From Trichoplax adhaerens (lineage: Eukaryota; Animalia; Placozoa): 64,000 nucleotides of DNA. This document shows, one piece after another, positions 1 to 64,000 of this stretch; position 1 is the first letter of the stretch, and each line of letters opens with the position of its first letter. The notes under the pieces are model-generated. The model was given only the letters and a program-made list of their open reading frames with translations, was not told where the DNA came from and made no database searches. The DNA lies in contig NW_002060943.1 of NCBI RefSeq assembly GCF_000150275.1, positions 10,572,209-10,636,208 on the forward strand, written 5' to 3'. A program made the position numbers and the translations under genes.

Positions 1-19
1 GTTGATGATATTGATACAG

Positions 20-3216: not shown

Positions 3217-3543
3217 TATAGCCTGCACTTGTAGAGTTATAAAAAGGTCCGTGGTACGTACTGTACGCGTATTCGATATGCTGTACAAGCATTTCTGTTT
3301 CAATATTTGGAGTCGTGACTATGATGATTTATTTCATTGCGTAGAAATTAGAGTACGTTTAGTTTAGTGCATTTTGCAAATTTACTAGTAAGCATTTTGC
3401 AGCATGAGAAGTAAGAACAGCTTTAAGTGTTTTTACTAAACTTTGTTCAGGATACAGTATATTGTCCATTGCGTTTACAGTCGCCACAAGCCACCATTGA
3501 AACAACAGACGACAACCGCTCATTTCCGTTCAACGCCAGTTTC

Positions 3544-15239: not shown

Positions 15240-16429
15240 CAGTCGCCCTTTTATACCGAGTGTCCCAACATCACGAGATAGCGCGATATGGAGAATGAAT
15301 TGCACAATCGACATCATCGTTTTAAAAGAATTATATTTAATTTGCATGTTAATCTTAAATATTTTCGAATAATGAAATTATGTTATTAATGTAAATAAAT
15401 GAAAGTATGGAATTGAACACAAAGTCAAACGTTCTTTAGATCAAAACTGTATCTAGTCTTACTTCCTATTAACCTAATTACTCAATGTGGTATACTCGTA
15501 CAGTGTACTCTGTATCTCGTGTATTAGATGTAGCAGCAATATTATTTTATACTTGCATTAGCGTGACGATTTATAAAAACACTACTGTGTCACGATATTC
15601 TTACGGTTTTACAATTTATACGCGATATCATAGTTCACAAATTATCATCTCGCATCTGCTTCATTAGATAGAGATTAGTATATACTTTCAAGACATTGGC
15701 AAAACTTATCGATAGTGGCTTGTCATCGCATGCAGTGACCTTAATTTAATACTAAATCGTCTTGCGAACCACTGTTTTAATACTGTAAGAAAGGAACAGA
15801 ATCTTGTAAGCAAAATTGAAGTTATTCAGTAGCAGATAGAATTAAAATTGCTTATTCTAGTTGAAGTGCGGGCCTAAATGCTACATAAAGTGAAAAACAA
15901 ATCTCCCTACTACCTAATTTATTATATAACATTAAGATTACACAATGTAAATTTTAATAAAGAGCCTTCACAACCAATTTATTTTAAATGTTAATAAACA
16001 GTTCTAAGTAAATCAGTTATTTTAAATTTGTGTTGCCATGTTCCATTTCTGAAAATAACCATTCTAAATGCATCTCATAAATAGCATAAAATTAATCACA
16101 TTTTTTCACTTAGACGAGTTTAGAAAGCATCACATGAAATTACTGTAAAATAAGTAGCGCCGAATACATCTTTAGTTCATTATCATTCTGCCCAAGAGTT
16201 ATTACTCTGGCACCGATATAGCGTAGATCAAATGCAATGATAATTGTTTGTTTACCCTTTCGTAAAAAGCAGTCATAAGTATTTACAGTATAGTACTGAA
16301 GGAGAGTGCAATCTATCTTGCTGTTCATTTTTTTTACTAAATTCGGAAGCTGGTCATACCATATGCTTTTAACATAAAGAATAAAGGAAATTTTTGTACG
16401 AAAACATGTTACTTAGGCTGGTTTAGTTT

Positions 16430-22353
<5,924 letters not shown>

Positions 22354-36572: not shown

Positions 36573-37433
36573 CTTCGGCTGGTTACAATATACTAGTAAT
36601 GTAGAAGTATCATGTAACTTTAAGAGTCTCGTAAGGTATTGTGATTTTATAAAGCAGACTAAACTTTATGAATGTAAGAATTGCGATATTGTATATTGAC
36701 GATCATAAATATTTACTATGTATAATATTTTTAATTAAATTAGTTAGGTAAGTTGTATTACAATCTTACTCTAGAAATGTTCTATAATTGAGATAGAAAG
36801 TTATGCATGATGTTAACAGTAATCAAATTCAAACTCCATGAGTTCCATATACTTACTAGATTAATTTCCTATCACCTATAAAACCCAAATGGACTATTTC
36901 AGTGAAATTTTGAAACTAGAATATGCTAAGCATTGAATAAGTTCAGGATTATAGGATTGTTGTCCAGTCGTGTATTTCTATGCCAAGTTATGGATTATGC
37001 GCTACCTATATAAAATGATTAAAATCTTCAATTAGGGATAGACACGGTGGGTTTACTTCAAATTAGTATAATCGTAATCATTGGCCAGTATTTACTGGTA
37101 GATACTACATAAATGAATTGTTTGTAAATTTTCCAGGTCTATACGATTCTGTTAACAATTAAATACGTTTAGTAGAATTCACTATTATCATACGGTTGTA
37201 AGACTGCTTCAGTTATACAATGTCGTATAAAATAACTTGTTTAGGCCAGCTTGATCTATTACTGTTGGTGCTTGTCGAGTATAGCTGGAAACTTATACAA
37301 TTACTATATTAATTTATTGACGTTAAAGCCATCATATAACCTACCTGGCTAAGAAATATTTATCTCAAGAGGCAGTATGAATATGCACTCCAATGGCAAT
37401 CTGTCTGTGCAGTATTATTTTGGATTAGCAAAC

Positions 37434-43100: not shown

Positions 43101-46100
43101 CAGATATGCAAAAATTTTATGCACAACATAAAATATCATCTATCAATAAAATATCTTGTCAATTGAAACCTTTATTATACTAATACGATTCCCTATTACT
43201 TATATTTAAAATGGCAATCTTGTTTTTCAGGAACTACGTGCTGCGAATCGGGAGTTAGAAGCTCCATTACAAGCACTAGAAGATAAGGTGGCAGACTATG
43301 AATACGATATCGGAATTCTAATTGATTTTATATCTGCAGCTAGAAAGTCCGGAGAATTTGATGTAAGAAATATTAGAAAATGTGTGGTTTTCGTTCTCAT
43401 TTAAATATATATATATTTGTTTCATTTATAGTAACAGTTTAAAGACGTAATTTTGAGTATATCATCTGCCTATGATTAATGTAAATTTAGATGTTATTAA
43501 ATATTAAATGATAGCAGTAAATAATTACTGAAATTCTACTTGCCTTCCTTGTGTCATTGATTGATAAATTATAGCCGTTCAGATGAAATCTTGTTGTTAG
43601 TAATCTATCGTTATTGGCTTTGTACGTAAGAATCAAAAATAATAGCAAAATTAATTCATTCTTAAATTAATAGCTAAATGCTATAGAATTACGAACCATG
43701 CCAGCTGAAATCATCCGAGCAATTCATTCAAATGTACCGAAAGACATGTAAGTTCATTTTATTACTGAATTAAATTTTAATTAGTTAGTAAATGTAGTAT
43801 TTGAAACTACAACTGTATCATTACGCGTACACCATAGAAAATAAATTTCAAGCTGTATATTTGTTTAATCATTAATATGGTCTAATACTATTTAATAAAG
43901 TAAAACATCAAGTGAAATTTTACAAGAACATATCGTAGAGCTGAAAAAACAGGTATTGCATTAATGCTTACATTATGTCAATTGGACAAGATCACTATTA
44001 TTAACAAATCTTTACTGCGATATTTGTTTCAAAGATGAAAAATTTGACAACTTTTTTGTAGTTCCTAACAATTGCAATCAATATACACTATAATGATGAT
44101 TTCTCGTTTAGCTAAACCATCGAGATGAGATCATTCAACGCTTGCAGCAGGATTTGAAGGAAAATGAAAGAAATCATCAAGAAATGGTTGATGAGGTATG
44201 ATCTATAAGCTAAAATTTATCCTCACGTTGATTTTACAATGTGGAATGTAATGAATAATAGCAATCCAGCATATTTTCGTATTAATATTAATACTATGAC
44301 GAATGAACAATTTTAAAATAGATATCAAAGAAGGGAAAAGCAGTGTCTTCCCTTGAAAGTGAGCTAACATCCATGCAGGGAATCAAAGATAATTCATTGC
44401 AAGAGGCAAGTATAATTCTAAACTATGTGTATCCTGTAACCTATTATGAAGAATGAAGTTAGCTTTATGGGAGATAGTAATGAAAATTCAACTTGTTTGA
44501 TATATTTTATTTGCAGTAGATGTAAATTTGATTAGCATTAATTAGTTATTCTTTGTGAAGAAGCTTATATCGTATATATTGTAGTTTCAGTAAATTGTTT
44601 CTAATTGATTTAGAAATTTAAGTATCATGCAAGTCAGTAATAGAATTTGTTATTGCAAATTACTACTCCAATAATAATTGCATCTTTCCAATGCTTAGTA
44701 GTAGTTTTCTCGAAGACAGAAGCTTTGTTCATGATGTGTTTTTTAATGAAATTGGATAGATGTTTATTTAATCAGTTTCTTTATTGCAAAACAAGCTGAA
44801 TTATTTTCGTGTAAAGTATATCGAAACTTTAATGAATTTTTACATTGATTTAAAATTGTAAGTAGCGTGTAGTTAATAATTGAGTATATTATTGCAGAAT
44901 GCTACTGTAATACCCTATTCCATCTTGTTAAAGTCAGTTGATTAGTCAGTCAGGAATTGGGGCTCATTTTTCCAACAGACATCCGAAATGATCGTAATTT
45001 CTTACTGATTAAATCGCAATGTACAAAAATGTTTGACTAAAAGATTGTATAAATATTATACTGACGGTGCTATCACGAATTTTTTACTATAAATAGATTT
45101 TTCAGAAAGATGCTGATATTCGAAAATTAAAATCAGAATTATTGATGGTGCAAAGTGAACGGGACGCTCTTGCGAAAAGGCTAGAAAGCCAGGATGCAAA
45201 TGTTGAAAAATTACAATCGATGCTGATAGTATTGCAAAACAAACAGAGATCGATCCTTTTAGATGTTAGTTATTTAAATGGAGTAATTTTAAATATCGTA
45301 ATTAACGAACTTGAACTGTTTAGCGATAAGGATGGTAAAAATCATAAAAGTAATCGTAATTAATAACTGCAATATAGGATAAAACAGATAATATGTTAGA
45401 AGAACAAAGAAGAAAATATGAGAAAGAGGTAACGATAATTTTAACTATATGTTGCGATAGCTAGTAAATATAACGTTGTTATTCAATATACCAAAATCTG
45501 AAAGACTGAAACTCAAATCACTACTTCAAAATTGAGCATATAGACTTTGAATTCTTATTTTATGTTGTGAAATAATGTATTATATAAAACATCGATTAGC
45601 TTGCAGATCGTGAAGAATGGATTAGACAATCAAAATCTGAAATAGATCTAATGCAGGAAAAGTCTAGTAGGTCAACTCAAGAGGTAATAAGCTTATAGTT
45701 CTCCTATATTCATTCCATATCATGAATTTTTCAATCGTTCCGCATTGTAGCTTATTTTATTATTTTAACTTAATAATTTTTCATACTTTTCTAGATTGCC
45801 GAAAATCAAACAAAAGTTCTCTCCTTGGAATCACAACTTCGCCTGTTAAAAGAACAGCATTCACTCACACTCAACGAAGTTAGACATATTACGTTTATAC
45901 TATTAGTTACTAACTACTGTAATTGCAAAATCATTCAAGATATGTAATATGTCTATGATATCGAGTATCTTTTCGATGATAAATGTGAAATTTATGTCTG
46001 GTAATACAAATAGACAAATTATGTTTACTTTTATTAATCGTTAACTGATTTCTTAGCTTAATTGAGATGATTTTTTTTATTTATCGATATAATCTTCGTG

Positions 46101-49100
46101 TAGTACTAAGCAATTCGCTCAAAATTTCTAGCTAATATTGCTCCTCTAAAGCAATATTAAACAAGTTTTTTATTTTATATTTTAAACTACAGCGTGAATC
46201 TCTACAATCTAAATTGAAAAAACTAGATTCAGAGAAGGATGAAATAGAAAGAAAGCACTCTCAAACGGTTGGCTATTTTTCACTTTTGCTTTTAATAATT
46301 AAAATTTGTTATGTCTATCTGATCTGATCACTACTAGAGACAATATAATCAGTCATTTATTTAATTCAGTAAATACTATAGAATATCGCTAGGTTATTAG
46401 AACCAGAAATGAAACTAGTAGAATCATTAATTAAACAGATTTACTTACATAGAAATTATACGTATATTACCAAAGAGTAACATGATTGAAATTAATCAGA
46501 ATTTTTCAATCTCCCAGAACACTTAATGTAGCCTGCAAAAGCCGTGTGTAGTTTCTATTTGATAAAGTAGTACACATGTAGGGATAACCAGTTTAGTTAA
46601 ATTAAATTATATTATATCAGGAGTTTTTATTTTAATCTTAATTAATAATACTAACGTACATCATCGTATCAGTAATAAATACCATATAAACATAACAGAT
46701 ATCCCTGAATCAATGAACTAGATCAAGTTGAAATCTCAGATTCTCGAAACCCTATTTAACTGCAGTATTGTATGAACTTGATACAGTTGATGCTCGCAGC
46801 CAACGATTAACACTCTAAAGGTTATATTATCTTTTGATGACTTTACAGATAAATCGCTTGGAAGTTCAAATCGAAAAGTTACAAAGTGATATGGCTTCGT
46901 TGGAAAATGCTAAAAAAGAGAGTGAAATCTCTGCTCAAGATGCTGCGGAAAGATTTTCATTACTACAGCAAGAAACGGATGAAAGTCATCGTAAGGTAAT
47001 AATCATTTAAAAAAGTAAAAAAGTTTTTTAACTTATGACTGGAGTATACGAGTATACATTATCAGTTTATCATTTGAGAACTTGGAAGAGGTTGAGCCTT
47101 TCATTACATTAATAATACAACTATAAATCATAAAGAAGTCTGTATTGTAAATTAAGAAAATTTCTGGTATATAATTAGGTAACAGATTGGCGCCTAGAAC
47201 TAAATCAGGTTAAACAAGGCTTGCAAGAGTCAAAAAATCAAAGCGAAAAATATAAGAAAGAGGTAAATTAATACTCGGATAAATCAATACGAAACTAATG
47301 AAATATAAAGTATTTACTACAGTACTCCTGTATCAAAAAGTAGCCTGATATAGAAATTATTAGAAATATAAGATGATCTCCTAACAAACAGTATGAGATT
47401 TTATTTAAAAAAAATTGTAAAACAAATGAATGAACTTTGACTTCAAATGGTTTACATCCCTAAGATTTATAAAGCTGTTATCTTGCTTACAAAAATTGAC
47501 GAAATTACCTTCGTGATATAGTTAGCAGAATATCCGGTTAAACTGAAAGAATTGGAAGAACAACGAGATGCAATCCAAGAAAAATACGATGAGAACCGCG
47601 AAGAAGTACATAATAATTTATCGACTACTTTTGATTACATTAATTATGAAGCTTATTAATTTAATTACGGCTTCCCCGTTACTACTTGTATATTTATTTA
47701 GCTGGAAAAAATTAAGACTGAACTTGAGAAATGTAAAATCAAGGCTGACGATGAACGTAACGCGCTGGCAGAAGAAGTATAATTTTAACCTTTTATCATT
47801 ACTAAAGCAGCTCATTCCTAATGTAATGCGGTAAATCATTACCTAAATACATAATAATCTATTTTAAATTATCAATATCAAGGTTGCGCATCGTCATGAT
47901 ATGCTAATCAAGACAAGACATGAAATCGTTAGTCAAGAGCAAAAAAATCGAGATTTGGTTGCAGAGGTAAATTGCAGTTTTCAAATTAAAGATAAATAGT
48001 GTTACGTGAGCTGTAAAATAATATTGAAGGCTCTAATCCTTAGTAAATATTACTGACCCACTTCTTAATAATTGAGCATTAAATTACTACTATACAGCTT
48101 GTCAGCCGTAAGGAAACAATTCATCAACTGCGCCAAGAGCAGAATCGTAAAACAGAAGATGTAAGTTGCTAGTTTCCATCGAAATCAATTTAAACCGAAA
48201 ATTTGATAACCATTACCGATGGGAACTATATCTCATTAGAATATATCTTGATCTAAAATAGTGTCTTAATGGTTATAAAGTAACAGATTTTACTATTATT
48301 CTAGTTTAATACGAAGCTAAACCAGTTCGAGAGAAAATTAGCCGAATCAAAAAATCAAAGTAACACGTACTGGGAAGAAGTTAGTTGATAGACAATCTTC
48401 TAATTTTAGCTATTATAATATTATTCTACAAATGTCTTTATCCAATACCATTGTATATCAAATTAAGTGTTATTCTATTTTGAAATTAAAGCAAATATAT
48501 AACGGGAAAATGTTGATAAATGATCTAAGATTTTAATCTTGGCATATCAGTTTAGATATAACTTTGTTTTAATATTTTTGCAAGTCAAGCTGTATTTTGT
48601 ATTCGCTTATTCTCTTATTCCTTTCCTTTAGATGACTAGAATGTCAGACCAAATTAAGAAATTTCTTGTTGAGGTTAGTTATCCTGCAGTAAGACGTAAA
48701 AAAATACTACATGTTCTAATAATAGCAACGAACGAAGGAAATTAAAATGTGGAAACGATTATTGTTTTTAATAGATTGAAAGCAAAGATGAAGCACTTCA
48801 GAAAGCCAATAATGAGATTGAATCGCTAAAGAATATCAATACTCAAACAGAGGCAAAGGTATGACACTTGTAATTAAAATAATTTACTTTCTTCTATAGA
48901 TTTGTGAATTTATTTTATTTTCGGCCTTAAGATCTAATCTAGACCTATCTTAAGCCACGTAATAATTGTTAGCATTGGTAATAATATACTTTATTACTAG
49001 TATCGGGATTATGAACAAACGATTGAAGATTATAAATTGCAACGCGATCAACACTTGGACGAAGTTAGTATTTATTGCAAGCGCTAATCTTCCGTTGAAG

Positions 49101-52100
49101 GGCAACTGTTAGTGTTGTATTGTTAATGATATATGAAACATTTTTATGATATTGTAGGTTAGCAAACGCGAGAAATCTATAGAAAAACTAGAACTTGACC
49201 TAATGATGGCCCAAGAAGAAGTTCGTAATAAATCAAATCAGGTCAGCATTTTCAATTTCATATTACGCTATTTTAATTGAAATTTTGGTCTGAGACACTT
49301 TTAACATTTGAATAATAAAGTTTTGCTATTGATAGCTTACTGTTTCACGATTGTAATATTTGCTTTGCTGGTTTAGGTTGACCGGTACGACAAAACAAGA
49401 GACGAATTAGAGCGAGAAGTTACCCTGACCAGGAAGCGAAATGATGAATTAATACAAGAGGTAAATTAGTATCATCCACATATGTGGATATGGTTCTGTC
49501 GGGCTTTACTTTTTCGTTAATCATATCTTACGAGTCAAAATTAACTAAATTGCGTCTATGATATAGTAATTTTTCTCTTGTTTATTTATGCTCTACATTG
49601 ATTCTAGAATAATAACCTATTGTCACGCATAGAAATTACAGATCTAGCAACAACCAGTGAACAAAGTACATTAATTGTCGAGGTAGGTACTATAGTATTA
49701 AGTGATGGTATCATTATATCGTACGCTGCTCATACTTTCTAATATCAAAATTAGCTTTAACAAAAGAAATATTTTAATTATGTATAAAATAGCAATTATG
49801 ATTATTAGTTAATTTAGCTATTTTATGCTAGCTGGCTATTATGATAAATCAGTTACTATTGCAGTAAAATATTTATTCTCAGCAATACAAATTACATCCT
49901 TAATTTATTTATTTCGTAATCATGTGCTTTCATGACATTAAAAATATAATAACTTTACGTTTGATGATCATTTATAGCATACAGTATTATTGCTTTTAGT
50001 GGCGATCAAATTACCTACGCAGAATTCATTCGTGATAAAATTTTTATAAATCTATCAAATACATAGGATAGGAAAGAAAATCATTTTATCGAGCATTTAA
50101 GTTTTATATTTGATTTAAGTAATGCGTAATAAGTAAAATCCAGATAATAGCACCCTGTATAATTGAAATTTTTTGTAAAACATGTATCTCCATTTTGAGT
50201 GTTGCGTTACTGACTAATTAGAACCTGATACTATTAGTTGTGTGTATTATAAAGTATTGACATAATCATAGTTGACTACATTTTATAGTAAATTTTGTTC
50301 TTGATATAAGAAAAATTTCATGCCATGACAAACTAATGCATATATTCTTACATAAATGTTAAAAATTCAAAGCTGGAAAAATCGAAATCTATTAACAATC
50401 GATTACTGAAGGAGTCGGAAATTATTAAGAATCAGCTTACAAACAGCCAAGCTAAAGTAAATAATGCGTTTCGTAGTTTAACTTCAGAACTTAATATTCT
50501 GTAGTATGGAAGTAATAAAACTTTTAATTAATAGGTTCAACAGCTCGATAGCGAAATTGATAAATTAAAGATGCAGCATCGCTCCGAGGTAAGTTTGGAA
50601 AATTACTATGCTAAATACTATACAATTGATCTATCTCGATATGGTGAATTATATCAAATCGGTTATAGTTAATAAAATTTTAAAATTTACTTCACTTAGC
50701 TGCAAGCACAAGAAAGTGATCTAAGAAATAAAGAAAGACTTCTTGAGGATACTGAAAAACGCTATTCTATTTTAAAAGAAAAGGTAGTATTATATTCCTG
50801 TCTTCGCGATCGAACATTGAACCCTATATTTAAAGTATAATTATATGATGCGATGAGGAAGACGCACAAGAACTTAACATCTGGATTACATTATAAAATT
50901 CTATTCTTTTAATGGAATCAATTAGAGTTGTTCTTGTATCGATTCTGATTCTTCCTTAGGTTAAAAATCAAGAAGAAGACATTGATCAATTACAGAATGA
51001 TTTAGATAATACATCATCTCGGGTTCGTTCTGCAGCTCATATGGTAAGGAGTTAAATAAATGAAGTTAAATTTAACTAAAGGCTACTTGCTAAAAAAATT
51101 TAGTATTTCCTACATTGATTAATCTAATTTTCTTTTCAATAAATTATAAAGATTAAAGCAAAAGACGATACGATAACTCGCTTACAAGCTGACATTAAAG
51201 CATTGCAATCTGAACGACAGAATCTTCTCTCGGAGGTGATCGATTAGCCTTTGTTAATCAAAACATTATTAGCCATATGCTAACTTGATTTCTTTACTTG
51301 TAGATTGGTCGTAAAGAGGATTCTATTAGTGAGCTAAAGAATGATCTTTACAAGATCAAGGATAGAAATGATGAACAATCGATAGAGGTTAGCTTTAGAG
51401 ATGCCTGGTCTTCTTTCATAAACATATACTTTACCTACAAGATTTGATTTGATTGTTAAAGTAATAAACAATATTGCTATTTGCGCTTAGGTTTCACATC
51501 AGCAAGATATTATTACGAAAGTGGAGAAATCATTAGGCGAGGCACAACAAGAAATTGAAAGTGTTAAGCAATCAGCCGACAAGGACGTAAGTGAAATAAT
51601 TTCTTCACGTCATTTGTAGCAGTGCTATCGATCACGATACGAGAAAAAGCCGCTAAAAATTCTAGCTGTGCTTACCAAAGAATCATCTAATTTTGTGAAG
51701 AGCTGGTTAAAACTGACAAGAATTTATTTAATTAAAGATAAAAAAAATTGATTGAAAATGTCAATCTGTACTTATTTAATGCTTTTACTGGCTAATCTCA
51801 TAACTATTTAAAATACACTATAAGAACATTGACTGTTAGTTTCTGGTATCCAACATCAATTGGAAAGATGATAAATTATCATCTTGATGTAATTAAGTCA
51901 TTGCTTAATTTGGAGAGATATGAACTAATCAATGCCATAATTAATATACAATCAACATTATCATTTAATGTCATTAATATAATAAGATTAGGATGTGTGT
52001 GAATTCAAGTAATAATGAATTAAGCAACAACTTCATCGAACATTTTATGTTGGATGAGTTAGAATCCTTCAGCTTAGGCTAGACGATCATTTTACAATCT

Positions 52101-55100
52101 TTAAAGTTGAAATTATTGACTTTTAACTTTATCAATCAGGCATTTCTTTAAGATTACAAGTAAAAGCTAATGGTACATTTATTACACCGCTAGTGATAGC
52201 ACTCGTTAACATCATTAATAGCTGCAGTATTAGTAATATCTAGACATAAAAGTTTTACTGGTTATAATCTTGATATTTAACATCCATCATTGTTTTTGGA
52301 CAGTTTTAATACTGAAATATCTTCAAAAGCTTGTTGAATTATTTTAATACTCTACTTTCATTTTGAAAAGATTATTAATATTGATTTCCATTTGGATATC
52401 ATGTTGGTGTTCTAGTTGATTTTTCACTACTTATAAACTTACTTAATTTTATTGGCTATCGTTAAGACGATCCTAATTCATATTATATAGTAATGTACGG
52501 TATTTTTCTCTGGTTTTAATCCACATCAGTAATAAATTTTCTTAGTTTTCAAGTTCTAGATACGCTGCGTAATTTCTGCGTTATACGTTATAATTTAGTG
52601 GATGGAAAACTGAAATTCTCAAGTTCAGTTATATCTCCAATGCTCTGCAACTACTGTTAAAAGATAAACGAAATTACCGATTAAAGATAATCAATTTTTT
52701 AAACTTTTTCCATAGTATAAATTGCAGTAAACTTATGAAGTAGACTACCATATCATGAAATATTATCGTTAGAAATTACAATGATGATGTACTACTGTAA
52801 TTTTGTGTTCTATATCAAATTTATGTATGAGTGATAGCGATTTGAGATCGCAATTTATGTCTAATGACTAGTTTTTCCTTCAAGCACTGATTGTTCAACG
52901 TGAGAATTCTACGATTGTAAATAATGTTAAAGATTATGGTTATGACGTTTTAGTTTTAGTTCAATTCAGTCATCGATTTTTTCATTTCAATAGCTTAGTA
53001 CCTAATTGCGGTGTCTAATAATGCTATATTGAAAAGGCACTATTTGCTGGCTGTCTTAGATAAAACATTCTCTTGATGGTGTAGTCTAATCAACAGTTTA
53101 TGAGCAGTGTTGACATTTTCTTTATTCGAGGTTACTTAGTTGTCCTAGATGAGCTATTTTAGCCACATTAATCCTTTGTCCATGGTAGTCATTTACGATA
53201 TATCATGATATCCACGTAAAAGATATTCCTACATGATTTCAATCAGGACTAACTATATACACCCATGATTTTTCTAGTTAAATCAGTGTGCGGAAACTAT
53301 TGGCAATTTAGAATCTGAATTAGCAGAATCTCGTCAAAAGTACACGGATTGCTACGAAAAGGTAATAACAATTGCAAAAGATTTACACACCTATAAGTAC
53401 CTTACAATAACTGATCCACTACTTGAGGTTGAAATGCCAGAATTAAGGAGTTCTCTGCAATAATAATTTCTCTATATAGCACCATAATAATACATGAGTG
53501 TATGCTGATTTCTTTCTCACTACAGCAGTTTGTTTCCATTTCACGGCCATGATATTGCAGTAATTCAGAAATACTTATAGGACATTAGCTATCTACTAGC
53601 GTTCTGTTACTATACTATAATAAATCTTTTTTTCCCTGCTCTTATTCGAATTTTATCTAATGATTTTAGAACTATTCGAATAATACAGTTCAGATAAGAC
53701 TCAGTTCCAGAGTATGATTACGATTGTCTACTTAGTTCAATTATTACGGTATAAAATAAATTAGCTTAAATTAAGTCAGATTACAAAATTATGATACACT
53801 GTTCGTATTAATAAGTAAGTTTTCTTTATATAGTTTTTACAATGCGAAAATGCTATCGAAAATTTAAAACGCGACAATGAAATGTTGTTGAGATCACAGG
53901 AGCAGTTAAAAGATGATGTAAGTAAATTTATTTAGAGTATATACGTATTTTTACCCTTAGTATGGGTAAATAATGGACCAGATGATCTTCATCTCTATTC
54001 ATTTAATGATAAATAAAAGAATTGATTGAATCCTTCTGTAATACGATTATTTTAGCTTGAAGAAGAAAGGAGAGAGATGGAGTTAAATTATAACTTAATA
54101 AAGGAAAAACATAAAGTTTGCCAGACCGAAGTATGTTAAACATTAAGTAAAATATTGTTTTTAATTTATTTCCAGTTATTTTATATGAATTGCGTACGGC
54201 ATTCTAAATATAGTTTACTAACAACTGGTAAATTTAACGTTACTAAATCGCTAAGGTTTCAAATCGTGATGGAAAAATAGTAGGAATGCAGAACGAGTAT
54301 AACAATCTTCAAAAACAAAATTTAAAAATTAAAGATGATGTAAGTTTGTTTCCCCTAAAGGAATACACACATATCAGATCCTTTATAACGGAAAATGCTC
54401 TGCTATTCTGTATTTGAACGCAGCTATTCAATACCCTTAAATATTTATTAAATACAATCATTTTTTTAGTTATCGCGACGTGAACAAGAGCTAAAAGTTA
54501 TTAAAGATCAATTATCGACGTTTCAACAAAATGTTGCTGAAATGAAGAAAAATTATCAGAAACAGGTATTAATAAAAATATGCAAGATGTTATTAGTTTT
54601 CTTTAATCTGCGTTACATCGACTATTTCAAACAACATATTCATTATCCAACACTTTCCTGATATGGTTATATCTATTTTAATATTTTTAATGTTAAATAC
54701 CTGTATAGCTGCATCAAAATGAGAAAACAATTCATCACCTCCAACAAAAGCAGCAAGTGGACACCAATGAGGTAAAATAAGAAATAAAGCAATTCTAACT
54801 TGCCTTACTTATCATTATATCATAACTGCATTACATGCATTTTAATTTGCTATAGATGTCCAACTTAGAAAGCGCGAATAACCAGTTACGAAAACAAGTA
54901 GAGGAGGCACAAAAATCGCTCCAATCAACGGTAATATAAGTTGTCATCCGGTGTATCTACTATCTACAGAACTTGTAACTGCTGTGATTAGATAGCGACC
55001 CAATTGAATAACAATCTCGGATTATCTTACCTCATTTTGATATTTTTCACTTATCGACTAGATTAAGAATAAAGAAGAAATAATCGATGGTTTAAAACGC

Positions 55101-58100
55101 GAAGTTGAGATCTCGGCTAATCGGGTTAATGATTTACTGGCGGAGGTACGCTCACCATTTTGCAGATACTGGCCAACTGTTAGCTTTAATCATCTTAAGA
55201 ATTAGTAGATCTGAAATCATTTTCTGTACTCATTGCGTTCGCTTTTTAGATTCCACAGATTCAGGAAAAGAATGAAGTATTAAAAGCGGAATTGCTTGAA
55301 CAACACCATCACAATATCGAAAAGGAGTCCAAGGTGGGTCAGAAATAACTATTCTGAGGACGGTTAAAATTTGATTGGTATCTGCTGTAGATTAAAAAGT
55401 CTTATTATATATCTAGATTGAAAAATTCAGAGAATCTAGCAAATTGCTAGAAGAAAAAATAAACAGCTACGAGAAACAGGTATTGAAACATTATCTTAGC
55501 ATCCAAATTAGTTTTATTTATTGTTTATCAGTTCGTAAGTTTCTTTCTTTATGATATTAATGACGTTCAGCCTAAATTATATAACAAACAAAGTAGGAAT
55601 TTAAAGATTAGCATGATTTTAGTATCATAAATTAGTTTCTATTAGTATTTTATTATTGTTTCTTTCATTCATAAAATTGATGATTTGAAAGCCAAATTAC
55701 GTGATAATTAATTCGAGGATTTACATTTCGACTGATCTTGTTATTACTAGTAATTTTCTGATGATTACTTTTTCATTTTGCTTTTCTTTCTTTTATAAGA
55801 CTAATGATATGAAAGCTAAATTACATGACAATCAATTAGAAAATCAACGTTTTGAAATTAATTTGTCAAACACGAAAGAAAAATATGTACAGTGCCAGCT
55901 CAAGGTTCGTTTAAAAATTAACGGGGATAGTACTAGTTACAAAGTGCTATTATCCTTTAATTCATTCCTCTTTGATTAGATCGAAAAGCAGGAAAGTCAG
56001 ATACATGATTTAGAGAAGAATATTGCAGATTTACGTGCACAAGTTAGAGATAAACATAATGATATTTTCATCGATGAGTTTAGGGTGGTTAACTTATTAA
56101 TACATTTTACTATTATAACTCTTTCAGATTAAGGTAAAGGATAAAGTTTATGACGATCTAAACGTAACTCTAAAGGAATCCAACGAATTTGCGCAGGAAA
56201 GACAAGAACAAGTTAGTAGAATAATAACAAAATAGCTTATAAAGAATTTTCGAACTGATTGAAGGTATGATACGCCTATCCTGTTAGATTGAGTCCTGTA
56301 CTCAAAATATTCAGAAGCTGAATAAAGAATTACAAAAACTGCAAAAACAATATCAAAAAGCATGCCAAAAGGTAAATGGACTATATATAGTAAAACGTTC
56401 AGCGATATACCGTAAAGCTGAAAGGTAGTATATAATAAAAATTCCCACTATTGCTAATTACGCAGATAACTCAATACGAAGACGCTGTTACTAATATGAA
56501 TCAAGAGCTTATTAGTAAACAAAAACAGGTAAAACTAACTCTCAAAAAGTTAATTAGAACTCTATATTCGGGCGAGAGAACAGTCTAATTCTTTAATCTT
56601 GACGACTATTTCAATATGTAGCTTCTCCAGCATGAAAATGCTATAGAAGATGCAAAAAATGACTTGTCTAAAGCTCAACGAAATCAACAACTAAGCCAGC
56701 AGGAGGTAATTGTTACGAATATTTGTCTTAGATTAAATATTTCCGTTCAGAGAAATTGTCTATAAATAATATCTGATGATTGCAAAATATTGTTCTTAAT
56801 CAGAAATTTCTTATCATTAACGTCTATTTATTGCACTAGCTCATGCAAATATATAGGCATTTAAATAGCATGGATTAAACACACTTATTTAGAGAAATAA
56901 TCAATAGATAATTTTATTATTATAATTTATTGTTAGCAGTTGTTAAGAAGTTCGCCACCATTATTATCCATTTATTTGATAATCTCACGCAAAATGCTTA
57001 CTTGTCCGAATTCACTTTAAATTTTGTTAGCTTTTGAGGATATAATGATGTGATATACGGAATGGCCGAATATGCTATATGTTGTATAAATACATATTAC
57101 AGTAAATAATTAACTGATATACTCGTATATGTACAAGATGTGATTTGCATATTGTAACTTATACGAACCTTAATAGATATTTTAATGTGAATCATTCTAT
57201 GATAATAAGTTTTGAATTTTACGCATTATACAGATTCAGAATTATGAAAGAAAGCACAAAGAATTAAGTACAGATTTTGCGGCTTTACGAGAACAACATA
57301 GGAAATGTATTGAACAGGTATGTCTCATTAGCTTGATGTGGAAGTATATTTCATTATAAAAATTTACAACTTTAAATTTATACATTGCTTCATACAATAT
57401 CGTAGAAATTGCAATTATTTGACTCAAATGGGCTAGTAATGCTGTAATTTACCAACTATTATAAATTTGTCGTTTTATAAGGTATCAGAAAAGGATGAGA
57501 TGATTCAAGAATTACGAGTGGAGCTGGTGGCAACGAAAGACCAACATGACGCTGCGAGACATGAGGTATAGATTTAAATTCATTTTCTTTAAATTTTTGT
57601 ATTAGAAAAAATCGTTGCGTTGGTGTATTATAAACAATTGACAGTTATAGCGATAAAATTAAAATGTTTCGAAAAGAGAAAATTTGATGCTTAAAATTAG
57701 TACGGTACCGTAAGAGCTCTTGTGATTGGTAAATAAGAAAGAATTTATTTTACTGGAAAAATATCAAATATTACTACATTCATTAAATGCAAATCATTAT
57801 CTGAACGATGCTAAATTTAATTTTTCATGAATTGAATTTACCAAATGTGAATTAAGTATTAATACAAACCCGTTTGTTAAAACATAATATACAATCTCAG
57901 CTGCATTAACATTTAGTTTCCTCAAACAGTATAACAGTAATGGAGTCGCTTAGTGAGTTTATTTGATACAGACTGTATAGTTTGATTAATCAAATGTTTA
58001 CTATATTGTTTTACTTTCATAGACAATGGATAAAATTAAAATGATACAAGAATTAAAGGAAGATCTTTCGTCTTTAAATCAGAAATTTATAAGTCAGGTA

Positions 58101-61100
58101 ATTGGAGAGTTGTTCTTTCACTTGGATAAAACTTTTGTAGTAAGCAGTTACTGCAGACACGGTACGTTTAGAATTATACGTACAAAGCTATTTGTTAAAA
58201 TATTCTTAAATGGGATTAAATATAGGCTGCTGATTTCGATGTTAAGCGTAAACAATTGGATGTAGACTTAAATGCACTTGAAAATCAAAGAGAAGACTTG
58301 CAAAACGAGGTAAGAGATATGGGATGTTTAGAAATGGTTATCGCACTAGTACGGTAGTTTTTAAATGAGTATTTTCTTGTATTAAACTTGTTATACGTTA
58401 GTAAATTCTATATCCAAATAAATTTTTATAGATTGTAGCTCGTGAAGACCGCATTAAACAGAACTATAATGAAATGGATTTATTGCAAGATGAAATACAA
58501 GATAGGAATCAACAGGTTAACTATAAGTCAGAATGACAGTTATTGCGATCTTTGTGATTTAGGCAAAGGCTAGTAACTTGCTAAATCTATTATTGATAAT
58601 GATTAGATTGATCAGTGTGAGCAAGTCATTGATGAATTAAAAGAAGAACTATCCAGCTTAAATAAAAAACATCGTCATGCGATTTCTGAAGTGTGTTAGA
58701 ATATATTTTTATAATAATTATCTTTCTCACATTTATTTTTCATCCATTTTATATCAATTATCCGTTCTAACCATACTCGTTGTATAGATTGCACAATCAA
58801 AAACGGATATTTTACAGTTAAAAGAAGATTTAATTAATGCTCGTCAACAATACAGAAATTGTGCCCAAGAAGTACGAATATTAGATACAATTTGAGATAT
58901 AAATTACTGATGTTACCTCGTTGAGATTATTTTGATAATTATGATTTGCTCTTTTCCTTAATATAGTTGGCTCATTACGAGGAGAAGCTTGTCATATTAG
59001 AGGGAACTTCCAACACAACGCAGCAGCAGCTAAATAATCGTTTATCAGAGGTAATAGTTCGATACATGTACATATTCTCATAATAAAATCTTATCAACAA
59101 TCTTATCCTGATATACCACGATAAGAGTATCGTGAAATTGTTATATACCAGATTATGCCAGTAAAAATGTCTATTTAACTTCTACAGATTGTAAAATTAG
59201 AACAACGATGTCAAAAATATCAAGGTGATTTACATGCTATGGAAGATCTTAAGAAAATTCAGGAGCAAAAGGTATGTTTCCGGTATTTATTTTGCTAGCT
59301 ATCGAAATTTTTTGCGAAACATATCAAGTATAAGTTGAGTAATAGAAATTTCGGGTTTTAATTTTGAAATGTGAAACGCATTTAATTTAAACCTGCTACT
59401 ACTTATATTTCGACGAGTAAGCAATCAAAGGAGATATTTAGTTACATCTTTTACCATTTGCCCAAATTTACGAAAGGCGTTTAAATTTATTCAAGCTACA
59501 CTTGTGGCCCTTTAAGTTTTGATTAAAAGATGGTAGTCGAAAGATGTAACCGATTACTGATTAAGTAATCATTAATTATTTTGTAATTTATTAAAATATC
59601 TCCCAAACGCTAACCAATTGATAGAAATATAGAGCACTAATTAAAAATATAAATCTATTCAATCTTAATATTTCTTTGCTTTATATTCTGATTATAGATA
59701 ATCGAAAAGGATAATCAGTTACAGGATATGAGACAAGAAATTGATAAATTAAAGATGATTTATAATGCTAACACGGAACAGGTTTTAAAATTTTTACTGT
59801 GAATAATTAACTCGTACGACGTATAGCATTAAATGCAGGAGTTTAAAAGTTAGATTGAAATTCAAGATATCAATAAAACAAAAAATGTGATTTTTGTTTC
59901 TGGAATAGATCAAAAAATATGAAACTGAAATAAAAGAGCTCGAAGAAAAATTAGCTAATTCACTGGAAAAGCAAGATTCTATGCGTGTTGCGGTAATAAA
60001 GTTTTCAATGATTACTTTATATGAATACCGTAGTAGCTAATTTTAATATTTGATATCAGATGAAGGAGAATAACGGATTACAACAGCAGCTCGAAATTAA
60101 TTATAAAAATGCCCTTGAAAGAACACAATCTTTGCAAAACCAGGTAAGATTTTAAAATAAACTTACTTACAAAATTGTTCTTAAACTATGATGTTGAAAT
60201 AGCTGTCTGGAAGTTATAATACCATTTCATGAAAATTTATTCAGATTAAGGATCTTACCGACGCAAATAGTGAAATGGATCAAACAATAAGCATGTTGCA
60301 GAAAGAGACTCAAGCTCAAGAAGCCGAAGTATTTTATAGATTAATACCATAGCCTAGAGTTGATGTGTTTTCCGGCTGATTATTTATACGTATTTGATTA
60401 CTGATAGATACATGAACGAAGCGAAATATTGGAACAAACGAAACAAGAACTGATTATTTTCCAGAAGAAATATGCTGATGCTGTTGAAGATGTAACTGTT
60501 ATCTGTTAAGATAATTTCGAAAACATAGGTTTATCTAACTTTTAGCGATGCGTAATAATTATCATTACAGATTGCTCAGAGAGATGGCCAAGTCGCTGTA
60601 CTTAATATGAATATTAAACAAGTGGAAGAACAAATCAAACGCTATGAAAATGAGGTAGGTTTGACATATTGGTATATATTTAACATCAATATTTTATTGG
60701 GATGGAATATCTAGTTATATCTCAGTTCTTCTCTATATCAATCTTTTCAGATCAAGCGTTATTCTGATGAAATTAAGAAATTAAAGAATGAATGTAATCG
60801 TTATGAAGAAGAGATTAAATTGATGAAAATTAAGGTAGTGCGCATTAAATAATCTGGTAAAGCTATCAGAATTACAATTAAAATTTCACATTATTTATTA
60901 GCTATCAGAAGCTACCACAGCTACCGGTAATAAGCAACAACGGTTAATTAAAACCGAAAAGCAAAAGAGAGAAGCTGAGGAGTCGGTTAGTTAATGCTCG
61001 ATGAAGCTAAGGAATGGTCCTCATATAGATAATAATTTTAATAACCTCCTCAACAGATTCAGCGTTATGCTCAAAAGTTGGATCTTATGAAGAAAGATTT

Positions 61101-64000
61101 TTCTTCACAAGTAAGCTAAAATTTCGTAATATTTCGATGATTAAGGTTTGAAATAATTATTAAACTTCATTAAAGTAAAATATATCTTTTTCAATGATAC
61201 GTATAGATGTCTTTAGCCGAAAACAAGATAAAAATGTTCCGACAAGAGCTTAAAAAGGCGCAAGATCAGAAAAATAATACTGCAGAAGAAGTATATCAGT
61301 TTACCTTATGCTTCCTAATTTTGAAAATTCTATAGAAAAGCTTTAAGAATAACTATGAGAAAATACTCAAAAGTGATCACTATAACGTAGGTATCCCAAT
61401 ACGAGAAAGTAATTCAAGAATTAAAGTCAAAGATCGCCAATATCCAGTCTGAAAGTCAAAGGAGCAACAAAGTTCTGGATGAAAAAGAAACTCAATTAGC
61501 TAATCTTAAAGCTGACTTAGTGGCTGCCAGAGACAGAGATAGCATTCACTCGACAGAGGTAATGAAAATGAATGATCTTTTCCAATATTTTTTAAAGTAG
61601 CTTCCCATAGGAACTAGTATCTCATTTACGTCGCTTGTTTCAATATTCGACACTGTTGGAATTCTAAAGGTGAAACACGTTAAAAGTGAATATGAAAAAA
61701 TCAAGAAACAGTATAAGATTACGATGGAGGAAGTAAGTAATTATTTTTAAAAGGGTTGGAAAAATAACTTTCTAAGCAATGATGTAAAACCATATTATAG
61801 CTTAAAGTTACTAGAGGATCGTTAGAAGAAGCCAGATCAAACGGTGATCGCTTGCATAAAGAGAGTGAATCAGTTGTTACGACAGTTAATCAATGGGTAA
61901 AAGAACAGAAGTGAGTGGATATAACCCGAATTTTATAGCATTTTATAATAAAATATCTTTGATTTCGTTAATTTACGGCGATAATAATTATAAACAATGT
62001 TTATTAATATTAAATTTTAGAGAAATTAATGAAAATCTTAATACTAAATTAAGGTAAGTAGATTAATAATGTCGATATTAGGACGTTATATTTTACAATG
62101 AAGAAATTTCAGCGCTCGTAGAAGATATGAGAACACTAAAAATTGTCATGATAGGACTTATTATTATTGCCTTATCAATATCTATTATCCATCTGTTAAA
62201 ACATTGCAATATAGAGAGCAAAATAGGACCATAGGATCATTAAAAGCTGAGAATGAGTAAGAGGATATAATTACGCGTTATTTCTCTAACTCACAATGAT
62301 TCACTTTAATACAATTCCAGTTAAAATCATGAGTTTAGGATATATTTGATGATTTCTATTTCATAGACGATTAATGGAAGAATTAAATCTATCCCGTAAA
62401 ACCCAAGTAAGCTATCAAAGGCAATTAGGTATGAAAATTTTTTTTTACAAATTGAAACTATTTCATCGATAAATAATTAATCGTTTATTTTTTGATTCCT
62501 AAAGATAACAGAGGCGTAGATGATGAAAGTTATAAGGTACAGGTTATGATTGTATTTGTTAATAGTTACATAGTTGATATCTCAGGCTATATTGTATGCT
62601 CATCTGTAGAATAAAGTGGTTCCAGATTCATAATGATATTAGCATAGATTTATACAGCAATTTCTATGACAGTTTTATATTCTAATCTAGTCAAGAAGAT
62701 ATTAAGACTATTATGAGAGATACTGTTAATTTAGTCGTTAAACTGCTAATAACTTAACAAGAACTATATGATATTTGTAAGAAATATAAAGATAGGTTAC
62801 AGTAGAAATCATGCATAGAACAGAAATTTATTTTATTTTTTCTTAGTCATTACAGTCCCATGCTACCCGTCAAAATCTAATGATTTCCAAATTGGAGAAG
62901 CACATTGAGCAATTACAGTAAGAACTATACATTGATAATTAATATGCTGAATAGAAGATTAAGCAATCGTGATAATTTATATTAGAAACGAACGAAAAGA
63001 TATGATTGAGATTATTGATGATTATAAGCCGCATACTAGTTCTTACCAGGACTTGAGTCAAAAGGTTAGTTGGTTGTAGCATGGAGGTGTCGTTTTAGTC
63101 TCGCTATTTTCAATTATCTTACGCTGATTTAGAATCTATGGATTACCTAATGAAATCTAATTTGTAGGTAAATGAGCTCAATCGAGAAGTTATTCGGCAT
63201 CAGTCGCTGGCTGAACGTGAACAAGCAAATCGTAAGGTATCGTATTGGAGTAGAGTGATATTCAGAATATACCCGGACCGTTTGACGGAATAAAATGATA
63301 TTTACTCCTTCGTTAATATTAATTGCGATAGCACGCAGCATAAGGAATAAAATTTGTATATAAATTTATGTATACTTTAATTTTTTATTTGATAGATTAT
63401 GGAGGATGAGATAGAGAAGAAAGACGCTATGATTGCCGATTTACGCCATCGGATCGCTGGTATCTCAAATTACGAAGAGCGTAAATTTGACAGTAGAACA
63501 TTAAATCAACCTAATCGTTATTACAAGGAAGATTTATATTCGTCGCGATATCCAAAAGACTTGTAAGTTATTCTGCTTTAACAAAAATTCCAGATATTAT
63601 ACGTGATATGAAGAAATATCTGTATATTTTAATCTAATGGTAATATTTTATTGGATTAGGGATGGGAGAGAAAAGGTTAATACTGGACACATATATAGTG
63701 AATTATCTTCTTACTGGGTTTATGTTGAATTTAACGCCATAAATTATTCATAAGTTAATAATCGCAATAATATTTCTCTCAAGATTCAAAAAGTTATGCG
63801 AGATGCGATGGAAGAGACAGGTGTCAGTGACCCCGAAATCTTAGAAAAGTCCTATTGGATTCAAAAAGTCGGAGAGGTGAAATAGATTTCTTACTTAGAA
63901 ATTGATAAGCAATTTCTAATCGTTCGTACATTTCGCAGTTTACTTTAATCAAGAAATATCAAGTAATCTGTTGACAATAAATTCAATTTTTAGTTATATT
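40113..64000 (+). CDS. Giant coiled-coil protein, PMFBP1-like; about 80 exons visible, 3' end beyond the window
   Basis: ATG 40113 gives MEEDYRQF...EEFRNLYQNRL, followed by NLQSYVEELSEQNDSLVHTVEDLERE and a long heptad rod. The C-terminal VNQWVKEQKEINENLNTKLREQ resembles the recalled [20 protein letters not shown] segment of PMFBP1, and SYWIQKVGE lies near the window end. The exons splice in frame by manual reading. The family name is from memory, not a search. Confidence 0.7.
40563..41830 (-). pseudogene. Possible spliced antisense pseudogene (about 7 exons, unknown family) in the first coding intron of the coiled-coil gene
   Basis: A chain of phase-compatible GT-AG introns on the minus strand separates less AT-rich blocks. 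Four internal exons each carry one in-frame stop. Confidence 0.3.
44406..45096 (+). other. GC-AG intron in the coiled-coil gene
   Basis: Donor GAG|GCAAGT closes an exon of exactly 84 nt (44322-44405), the modal exon size of the array. Confidence 0.8.
51830..53183 (-). pseudogene. Possible degraded F-box/LRR gene nested antisense in a large intron of the coiled-coil gene
   Basis: Minus-strand LQSIGDITELENFSFPSTKL*RITQKLRSVSRT*K (52650-52546) is F-box-like, followed by LRR-like ISVLKLSKN and LLCLDITNTAAIND. Many stops are present. Confidence 0.35.
55676..55717 (+). pseudogene. Decayed partial duplicate (pseudo-exon) of the exon starting at 55800
   Basis: 33/42 nt identical to 55800-55841 (IDDLKAKLRDN*FE vs TNDMKAKLHDNQLE). 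The acceptor ATAAG has become ATAAA and a CAA codon has become TAA. Confidence 0.8.

What the first reader, a model, noticed from the sequence alone, without database searches (positions are those of the whole stretch)
44112..61732. Heptad-quantised exon array: a ~1,770-residue coiled coil built from 64 symmetric (phase 0) exons, 40 of them exactly 84 nt
Seen in sequence: every intron across this 17.6-kb stretch falls between codons. 52 of 64 exons are exact multiples of 7 codons (40 x 28, 7 x 21, 2 x 56, and 14, 35, 49), including 14 consecutive 84-nt exons at 58226-60985. 58 of 64 exons begin with I/L/V/M/F/Y and most end in E/Q/K/D, so introns sit at a fixed heptad register. The loose unit consensus is I..(K/R/Y)(E/D)..I..L..(E/D)L......(Y/H/N)..(A/C/L)..E. 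The pattern breaks down (phase 1/2 introns) in the N- and C-terminal regions. Established: one exon per structural repeat is known for collagen (54 nt) and RI-type LRR genes, and 28 residues is also the myosin/paramyosin rod period. Inference: the rod grew by serial duplication of an 84-nt exon. Any 7n exon can be skipped without losing frame or register, so the gene could act as a splice-tunable molecular ruler (about 4 nm per exon, about 260 nm in total at about 0.15 nm per residue).
Basis: partly seen in the sequence, partly recalled or inferred. Interest (0 to 1): 0.85.

Follow-up and report, generated by a model that had tools for sequence, protein, structure and literature searches.

The report
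One exon per 28-residue coiled-coil unit
A single expressed Trichoplax gene encodes a rod-shaped coiled-coil protein about 260 nm long, built from 63-64 consecutive in-frame exons that mostly encode exactly four heptads (84 nt); this is a clear record of growth by exon duplication, but nothing yet shows that splicing adjusts the rod's length.

Summary
My own GT-AG/ORF model gives 63 firm phase-0 exons at 44112-61732 (+), encoding 1,749 aa. The lengths are 39 x 28 aa, 7 x 21, 2 x 56, and one each of 49, 35 and 14. The other 12 exons (25, 32 or 18 aa) are all 7n+4.

RNA-derived contigs from four studies confirm every junction of exons 37-63 as one continuous isoform. A related placozoan contig keeps exons 62 and 63 without indels.

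The exons share a true 28-residue unit in register with their boundaries. An exon-blind heptad decoder places all register shifts at the 7n+4 exons. The repeat occurs at no other clear locus in the 105.6-Mb genome. Two myosin-II rods and a rootletin-like gene in the same genome are not quantised.

Two decayed partial copies of exon 37 in intron 36 show that exon duplication happens here. Growth by exon duplication is therefore supported.

The splice-tunable ruler idea has no support, because no skipping joints were seen, but contigs cannot exclude minor isoforms. The protein family is unresolved. It is not myosin tail, rootletin, TMF, ELKS or BicD.

The scan had already noted the 7n+4 stutter exons and the exon-37 fossil on this same stretch, and smaller heptad-quantised exon sets elsewhere in this genome.

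The parts
40113..40259 (+). Probable first coding exon (ATG at 40113, 49 aa, ends in phase 0)
   Evidence: Open frame and donor in the model. Not verified by RNA. The upstream neighbour is a WD40 gene on the minus strand.
42384..43952 (+). N-terminal exons: 42384-42533, 42749-42832 (84 nt), 43231-43362, 43674-43747 and 43901-43952. The last two are joined by a phase-2 intron.
   Evidence: Ab initio model only. No Pfam family found.
44112..61732 (+). Core array: 63 firm phase-0 exons (1,749 aa), 39 of them 84 nt, each starting at heptad position 'a'
   Evidence: Junctions of exons 37-63 confirmed by RNA contigs.
44322..44405 (+). Exon 2 (84 nt), the only exon with a GC donor (gcaagt)
   Evidence: Sequence and model. 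A GT-only model needs implausible micro-exons here.
45097..45264 (+). 56-aa exon made of two 28-residue units in one exon (intron absent or lost). Exon 62 at 61391-61558 is the same kind.
   Evidence: The profile aligns two units 28 residues apart.
45378..45428 (+). Doubtful 17-aa exon or decayed exon relic. It resembles positions 12-28 of the unit and the 3' ends of exons 8 and 13.
   Evidence: Its acceptor score of -0.8 is below that of every firm exon.
46193..46267 (+). First of 12 'stutter' exons of 7n+4 codons. The others are 47702-47776, 48305-48379, 49608-49682, 50535-50588, 51491-51586, 54056-54130, 54470-54565, 54856-54930, 55259-55333, 58023-58097 and 61057-61110.
   Evidence: Lengths are 25, 32 or 18 aa. 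The exon-blind heptad decoder puts every register shift within 13 residues of one of these exons' junctions.
55250..55333 (+). Exon 35 with two in-frame acceptors 9 nt apart (55250 gives 28 aa; 55259 gives 25 aa)
   Evidence: Acceptor scores are 4.6 and 6.0. No RNA evidence was laid here.
55548..55731 (+). Two decayed tandem partial copies of the exon-37 acceptor region plus its 5' part, inside intron 36 (55548-55591 and 55659-55731, period about 122-124 nt)
   Evidence: 61-77% identity to 55783-55855. The nearer copy has AA in place of the acceptor AG and an in-frame TAA.
55800..61732 (+). RNA-verified part: exons 37-63, including the 14 consecutive 84-nt exons at 58226-60985
   Evidence: GT..AG joints at the predicted places in four runs from four studies. 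Contig coordinates fit the exon lengths.
61801..63876 (+). C-terminal exons with mixed intron phases (61801-61910, 62021-62053, 62215-62256, 62367-62428, 62505-62542, 62847-62917, 62986-63064, 63168-63236, 63396-63562 or -63492, 63784-63876). The gene continues a few hundred bases past the window end.
   Evidence: The 61732|61801 junction is seen in RNA. Exons up to 62542 are conserved in relative contig L003. The rest is model only.

Best explanation
This is one single-copy, expressed gene of the placozoan Trichoplax. It encodes a protein of about 2,270 residues whose central 1,749-1,769 residues form a continuous alpha-helical coiled-coil rod about 260 nm long, most likely a parallel dimer.

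The rod is made of about 60 very diverged copies of a 28-residue, four-heptad unit: I-x-x-[KRY]-[ED]-x-x-I-x-x-L-x-x-[ED]-L ... [YHN]-x-x-[LA]-x-x-E. Each unit is one phase-0 exon that starts at heptad position 'a' and ends at 'g'.

The array arose by old tandem duplications of an exon together with its intron. Later changes were limited to those that keep the reading frame: units fused where the intron is missing (56 and 49 aa), whole heptads gained or lost (21, 35 and 14 aa), and 3-residue losses at an exon end (25, 32 and 18 aa). The 3-residue losses give 12 true heptad stutters that lie at exon junctions.

The gene is spliced constitutively. The rod therefore most likely works as a fixed-length structural spacer or tether.

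Shown: the exon structure, expression, register, stutters, uniqueness in the genome and the duplication relics. Inferred: dimeric coiled coil, order of events and cellular role.
For: Exon chain and statistics.

RNA junctions for exons 37-63 in four studies, as one continuous isoform.

Conservation of exons 62-63 and the C-terminal exons in a related contig, with diverged introns.

Coiled-coil signature: a 3.52-residue hydrophobic period well above shuffles. Core columns a1, a8, d11 and a15 are 76-97% I/L/V/M/F. There is 1 Pro and 14 Gly in 1,749 aa.

True 28-residue unit: in-register mean score +13.8, against +1 to +3 for heptad shifts.

Exon-blind decoder: 53 of 63 exons start at 'a', and all 9 register shifts lie next to 7n+4 exons.

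The profile of the unit hits essentially only this locus in the whole genome.

Duplication relics beside exon 37.

Control coiled-coil genes in the same genome are not quantised.
Against: Exons 1-36 have no RNA or cross-species support yet.

No neighbour-versus-distance similarity gradient and no intron similarity remain, so tandem duplication is inferred from the pattern, not from a tree.

The homodimer test gave no verdict.

Polar residues at core positions d4 and a22 make parts of the coil non-ideal.

No orthologue outside placozoans and no domain were found, so the cellular role is a guess.
Confidence: 0.72

Rival explanations
1. Splice-tunable ruler. Regulated skipping of 7n exons, or a choice between in-frame splice sites 9 nt apart, produces rods of different length or stutter pattern in different cells or states.
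For: All 63 exons are symmetric phase 0 and start at 'a', so any 7n exon could be skipped without losing frame or register. Exon 35 has two comparably scored in-frame acceptors that would switch between 28 and 25 aa.
Against: In four RNA data sets from four studies, the 27 exons tested form one continuous chain. The number of joints equals the number of constitutive junctions: 15 shown plus 11 not shown makes 26. Only low-depth unspliced fragments of intron 51 were seen beside it. Contigs cannot show rare isoforms, so this is weak negative evidence.
Confidence: 0.1
2. Periodic intron gain. A long repetitive coiled-coil open reading frame existed first, and introns were later inserted at the same proto-splice site of each 28-residue unit (...GAG|AT...), rather than exons being duplicated with their introns.
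For: Units end in GAA/GAG and start with A/G-rich codons, giving a recurring splice-like context. Introns share no detectable similarity. The 56-aa exons could be units that never received an intron.
Against: It needs about 60 independent insertions at exactly the same codon boundary. The decayed copies beside exon 37 include the acceptor flank plus the exon, which shows that duplication of exon-with-flank units does happen here. Other long coiled-coil genes of the genome keep huge exons.
Confidence: 0.1
3. Periodic docking scaffold. The conserved first half of each 28-residue unit (about 4.2 nm) is a repeated binding site for a partner with a similar lattice spacing, in the way nebulin modules or tropomyosin periods work, and this is why the unit length is held so strictly.
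For: The position-specific pattern goes beyond simple heptads: a basic or aromatic residue at core position d4, acidic residues at e5 and g14, and Y/H/N at a22. In-register similarity is much higher than for heptad-shifted alignments.
Against: Twelve stutters and many 21/25/32/35-aa units break any long-range 28-residue phase. There is no strong 28/n periodicity of charge, even in the perfect 392-aa block. No partner is known.
Confidence: 0.08
4. Not a continuous rod. Each 28-residue unit is one arm of a helical hairpin or solenoid repeat.
For: The second half of the unit has a weak hydrophobic core: a22 is only 20% and d25 only 30% I/L/V/M/F.
Against: There are almost no helix breakers (1 Pro and 14 Gly in 1,749 aa). 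The heptad register runs unbroken across junctions. The profile matches only coiled-coil chains in the PDB.
Confidence: 0.04

Closest known systems
Titin PEVK exon array (vertebrates)
   Same: A long run of short, highly repetitive, frame-preserving exons, each encoding one unit of about 26-28 residues. PMC6469411 describes 113 annotated short repetitive PEVK exons. The 26-28-residue PPAK unit is from my own knowledge.
   Different: PEVK is a disordered, proline-rich spring with extensive documented alternative splicing. Here the units are heptad-based helices with no Pro, and no alternative splicing was seen.
Fibrillar collagen 54-nt exons and nebulin 35-residue module exons
   Same: One exon, or a small multiple, corresponds to one structural repeat. 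Introns lie between codons. Growth by exon duplication. This is established textbook knowledge, cited from memory.
   Different: The structural quantum differs: Gly-X-Y triplets or actin-binding modules rather than four coiled-coil heptads. I found no description of heptad register and stutters packaged at exon ends for any coiled-coil gene.
Myosin II / paramyosin rod (28-residue repeat)
   Same: A long coiled coil whose natural super-period is 28 residues.
   Different: No Myosin_tail_1 match at this locus. No strong 28-residue charge periodicity. The two myosin-II rods of the same genome have heterogeneous exon lengths: 3 of 27 and 2 of 28 are multiples of 21 nt.
Smaller heptad-quantised exon sets noted earlier in this genome (s1-744546, s1-785678)
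   Same: Symmetric exons that are whole multiples of 7 codons in Trichoplax coiled-coil segments.
   Different: Those have 6-8 exons of 105/147 nt or similar, and one is in phase 1. This array has 63-64 exons in phase 0, with a defined 28-residue unit and 12 stutter exons. I did not re-examine those loci.

Membership tests
Alpha-helical coiled coil (heptad repeat) | Hydrophobic periodicity of about 3.5 residues | tested here: met
   The spectral peak is at 3.52 residues with power 32.7. Shuffles give a mean maximum of 8.1 and a highest value of 14.3.
Alpha-helical coiled coil (heptad repeat) | Apolar a/d core and few helix breakers | tested here: met
   Columns a1, a8, d11 and a15 are 76-97% I/L/V/M/F. 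There is 1 Pro and 14 Gly in 1,749 aa.
Alpha-helical coiled coil (heptad repeat) | Self-association of chains (dimer or higher) | tested here: inconclusive
   Two copies of exon 62 scored 0.07 against a mark of 0.32, which the tool reports as no verdict.
Exon-per-repeat arrays (collagen, titin PEVK, nebulin type) | Each structural repeat is encoded by one symmetric exon, with introns at the same point of the repeat | tested here: met
   63 phase-0 exons, 39 of exactly 84 nt, and 53 of 63 starting at position 'a'. 26 junctions confirmed by RNA.
Exon-per-repeat arrays (collagen, titin PEVK, nebulin type) | Repeat exons are alternatively spliced to vary length (titin and nebulin only) | tested here: inconclusive
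   No skipping joints in contigs of four RNA runs over exons 37-63.
Myosin_tail_1 (PF01576) | Match to the family profile | tested here: not met
   A whole-genome search finds the family only at C1384 and C1413, not in the window. No exon matches it in Pfam scans.
Myosin_tail_1 (PF01576) | Strong 28-residue periodicity of charge | tested here: not met
   In the perfect 392-aa block, only the 28/6 harmonic of net charge slightly exceeds the 99th percentile of heptad-preserving shuffles (4.5 against 3.7). The 28/1 and 28/3 harmonics are at background.
Rootletin / CROCC (PF15035) | N-terminal Rootletin domain | tested here: not met
   The domain maps to C1409:5.67 Mb, a different gene with very large exons.
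TMF1-type golgin (PF12325, PF12329) | C-terminal TMF_TATA_bd domain above the cut-off | tested here: not met
   Exon 62 scores 20.4 bits in the Pfam scan and 18.9 bits in the six-frame search of the genome, against a cut-off of 29.1. The genome's real match, at 53 bits, is at C1397.
No Pfam model exists for it. Single exons are too short for the protein searches.

The most novel reading that the evidence does not exclude
The array is a genuinely adjustable rod. In some cell types or life stages, whole 28-residue exons are skipped, or acceptors 9 nt apart (as at exon 35, 55250/55259) are chosen. The animal would then set both the length (in 4.2-nm steps) and the local stutter pattern of a coiled coil about 260 nm long by splicing.
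Probability: 0.1. Interest if true: 0.85.

Novelty: new variant of a known kind. Interest (0 to 1): 0.6.

Why it matters
This is an unusually clean natural case in which gene architecture copies the structural quantum of a coiled coil. One exon equals four heptads, introns always fall at the g|a boundary, and every heptad discontinuity (stutter) lies at an exon end.

It gives a concrete model for how very long rod proteins can grow and be trimmed, by exon duplication and small splice-site shifts, without ever breaking frame or register.

It offers a set of about 60 natural variants of one 28-residue unit for studying coiled-coil stability and stutters.

It also defines a precise, cheap test of whether any organism uses splicing to set the length of a coiled coil, namely long-read cDNA. 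Comparing exon number among placozoan lineages could show rod length being tuned in evolution.

Tried and rejected
- Family identification failed. Pfam scans on 10, 60 and 8 exon translations gave only sub-threshold generic coiled-coil hits.
- A phmmer search of exon 62 against 1.84 billion representatives found only a 67-aa ORF from a related metagenome contig and one unrelated repeat protein.
- The search for homologous proteins with exon 3 found nothing, and a metagenome scan with exon 62 found nothing.
- The ESM Atlas gave no usable hit for either the N-terminal or the C-terminal exon.
- PDB searches gave only generic or designed coiled coils.
- Complex prediction with two copies of exon 62 returned no verdict (score 0.07). 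This is not evidence either way.
- There is no higher-order periodicity of exon types: similarity by exon lag is flat.
- There is no neighbour effect in similarity.
- Tandem Repeats Finder finds no DNA-level tandem array.
- The profile search of introns found no further hidden 28-mer exons.
- The 1.7-kb intron 26 is unique in the genome, so it is not a repeat insertion.
- 'Loose ends' of RNA contigs at 59737/59738 looked like odd joints. They are cross-alignments of exons 21 and 30, which share about 14-21 nt with exon 52.
- Loose ends at 56321 and 58947 match nothing in the window and were not explained.
- Literature searches for heptad-quantised exons in coiled-coil genes found no description.

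Full report
**Setting**

The window is G000:C1414:10572209-10636208 (+) of a 105.6-Mb assembly in 1,414 contigs. Earlier agents of this scan name the organism as the placozoan Trichoplax adhaerens. From my own knowledge, the assembly size and contig number fit that genome. The region is AT-rich, about 29-30% G+C, with short GT-AG introns.

**Checking the observation**

A blind scan for AG-preceded, GT-followed open frames between 43 and 64 kb gives 84 nt as the most common length. About 41 of the 46 such 84-nt candidates read as coiled-coil peptides.

I trained a codon and splice-site model on these candidates. I then chained exons by dynamic programming, allowing all phases, and curated the result.

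- The core is 63 consecutive exons from 44112 to 61732 on the + strand.
- Every intron lies between codons. The median intron is 118 nt, with a range of 67-1,691 nt.
- There are 62 GT donors and one GC donor (gcaagt after 44405).
- Exon lengths in residues are 39 x 28, 8 x 25, 7 x 21, 2 x 56, 2 x 32, 2 x 18, and one each of 49, 35 and 14. The total is 1,749 aa.

The statistics are strong:

- 51 of 63 exons are multiples of seven codons (p = 3e-32).
- All 12 others are 7n+4 (p = 5e-10).
- 58 of 63 start with I/L/V/M/F/Y (p = 1e-28).
- 58 of 63 end in E/Q/K/D.

The 14 consecutive 84-nt exons at 58226-60985 are exact.

- A 17-aa exon at 45378-45428. Its acceptor is weaker than that of any firm exon (-0.8, against a minimum of 1.0). 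It looks like the 3' part of a unit.
- The upstream one of two in-frame acceptors of exon 35. 55250 gives 28 aa and 55259 gives 25 aa, with scores of 4.6 and 6.0.

In control stretches, 84-nt candidates number 5-16 and the most common length is 30-39 nt.

**Transcript evidence**

One run search found runs holding 0.20-0.24 of the sampled words of 55800-61799. By my count the exon-internal words of that stretch make up about 0.245. Three other runs held 0.83-0.88 and are presumably DNA.

I laid four runs from four studies on that stretch.

- They gave spliced contigs whose GT..AG joints fall exactly at my exon ends.
- 15 joints are listed and 11 more are not shown. Together these make the 26 junctions expected for exons 37-63, so no extra (skipping) joint was reported.
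- In one 4,598-nt contig, the record coordinates of the anchor pieces fit the predicted lengths of all intervening exons.
- The contig continues into the exon starting at 61801.
- Only low-depth unspliced pieces of intron 51 were seen beside the spliced form.

**Cross-species evidence**

A phmmer search with exon 62 found a 67-aa ORF at 80% identity on a 1.6-kb metagenome contig. That contig is collinear with 61388-62539.

In alignment, exons 62 (168 nt) and 63 (63 nt) have the same splice sites and no indels. The introns are full of substitutions and indels.

**The repeat unit**

Column statistics of the 39 28-mers give:

| Position | Residues | Share |
|---|---|---|
| a1 | I/L/V/M/F | 97% |
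| d4 | R/K | 41% (Tyr and Cys also common) |
| e5 | E/D | 64% |
| a8 | I/L/V | 76% |
| d11 | L/M | 76% |
| g14 | E/D | 71% |
| a15 | L/I/V | 82% |
| d18 | I/L/V/M/F | 51% (Leu commonest; Thr, Ser, Ala also) |
| a22 | Y/H/N commonest | only 20% I/L/V/M/F |
| d25 | L/A commonest | 30% I/L/V/M/F |
| g28 | E | 20 of 39 (58% E/D) |

- Aligned in register, exon pairs score +13.8 on average.
- Shifts of 7, 14 or 21 residues give +1 to +3. Other shifts give -10 to -18.
- The unit is therefore a real four-heptad repeat locked to the exon boundaries, not just heptads.
- Copies are old: mean identity is 16% at the protein level and 39% at the DNA level.
- Neighbours are no more alike than distant exons, there is no higher-order periodicity, and there is no DNA-level tandem repeat.

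A profile of the unit hits 26 places in this locus. It gives only two weak hits (E = 0.44 and 2.9) anywhere else in the genome.

**Coiled-coil character and stutters**

The hydrophobic spectrum peaks at 3.52 residues. There is one proline in 1,749 residues.

I ran a heptad Viterbi decoder that knows nothing of exon positions.

- It places 53 of 63 exon starts at 'a'.
- It finds nine register shifts. Six are +4. Three are +1, which I read as two nearby +4 shifts merged by the decoder.
- Every shift lies within 13 residues of a junction of a 7n+4 exon.
- The 12 exons of 25, 32 or 18 residues are therefore true stutters.

Profile alignment gives a tentative picture of the odd lengths, because scores are only 2-16 bits. 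They look like the 28-mer minus 3 residues at its 3' end (exons 6, 33, 45) or its 5' end (exons 13, 29), with a heptad added or removed, or two units fused.

That the changes sit at exon ends fits small splice-site shifts. The tandem acceptors of exon 35 would be such a shift caught in the act.

The scan had already noted the stutter pattern on this same stretch (s1-786981). I confirm it independently.

**Evidence for duplication**

Intron 36 holds two decayed partial copies of the acceptor flank plus the 5' part of exon 37, spaced 120-124 nt apart, at 61-77% identity. The nearer copy has lost the AG and has an in-frame TAA. This agrees with note s1-787041.

The candidate exon at 45378-45428 resembles the 3' ends of exons 8 and 13.

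**Is this the genome's norm?**

No, in the controls I could build. My models of two myosin-II rods and a rootletin-like gene of the same genome read as good proteins. Few of their exon lengths are multiples of 21 nt:

| Control gene | Exons that are multiples of 21 nt |
|---|---|
| Myosin-II rod, C1384 | 3 of 27 |
| Myosin-II rod, C1413 | 2 of 28 |
| Rootletin-like gene, C1409 | 1 of 20 |

These genes have mixed phases, and the rootletin-like gene has exons up to 980 nt.

BicD, ELKS and other coiled-coil hits lie in open frames of 600-3,000 aa. The N- and C-terminal coiled-coil exons of this same gene are not quantised either.

Earlier notes report smaller heptad-multiple exon sets elsewhere in this genome (s1-744546, s1-785678). 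The tendency therefore recurs, but not on this scale.

**What the protein is**

The gene probably starts at the ATG at 40113. It lies divergent from a WD40 gene on the minus strand. It ends a few hundred bases past the window, giving about 2,270 residues.

No exon reaches any Pfam threshold. The loci for Myosin_tail_1, Rootletin, TMF, Cast/ELKS and BicD are all elsewhere. Atlas, PDB and protein searches gave nothing specific.

The search with the joined spliced protein was left out.

In the perfect 392-aa block there is no myosin-like 28-residue charge wave. The dimer test gave no verdict.

**Interpretation**

The best reading is a constitutively spliced, fixed-length coiled-coil rod of about 260 nm. 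It grew by old tandem duplication of an 84-nt exon with its intron. It has since been edited only by frame-keeping and mostly register-keeping changes.

The splice-tunable ruler remains possible but has no support. I put it at about 0.1.

Known analogues are the exon-per-repeat arrays of collagen, nebulin and titin PEVK (PMC6469411 for the last). I found no description of a heptad-quantised array with stutters placed at exon ends. I therefore rate it a new variant of a known kind, with interest 0.6.

Noticed in passing
window 55250-55259: Two in-frame AG acceptors 9 nt apart in front of exon 35 have similar scores. Using one or the other would make a 28-aa regular unit or a 25-aa stutter unit.
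   Followed up: partly
window 44405-44411: This is the only non-GT donor of the array, a GC donor in the consensus context GAA|gcaagt after exon 2.
   Followed up: partly
window 59252-59695: Low-depth RNA-run contigs (depth 2.6-3.3, against 44-45 for the spliced contigs) cover parts of the 426-nt intron 51. They could be unspliced precursor or DNA carry-over.
   Followed up: no
window 56321 and 58947: In all four RNA runs a contig aligns only up to these points and then continues with letters found nowhere in the window. It is probably another transcript sharing a short low-complexity stretch. This is unexplained.
   Followed up: partly
window about 30000-36700, minus strand: The upstream neighbour is a multi-exon WD40-repeat gene (Pfam WD40, E = 3.5e-10 on one exon) transcribed divergently from the coiled-coil gene.
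   Followed up: partly
window 1-18000, plus strand: This stretch has many AG..GT open-frame candidates (581 in 18 kb) and positive GC skew. That suggests another intron-rich gene on the plus strand. I did not examine it.
   Followed up: no
G000:C1414:9555294-9555494 (minus) and C1398:533394-533615: Weak coiled-coil hits lie inside open frames of 3,099 and 1,134 aa. Some other long coiled-coil genes of this genome therefore have giant exons, the opposite architecture to this array.
   Followed up: no
window 50553-50573 and 59737-59757: Exons 21 and 52 share an identical 21-nt stretch encoding EIDKLKM. This caused cross-alignment of transcript contigs.
   Followed up: yes
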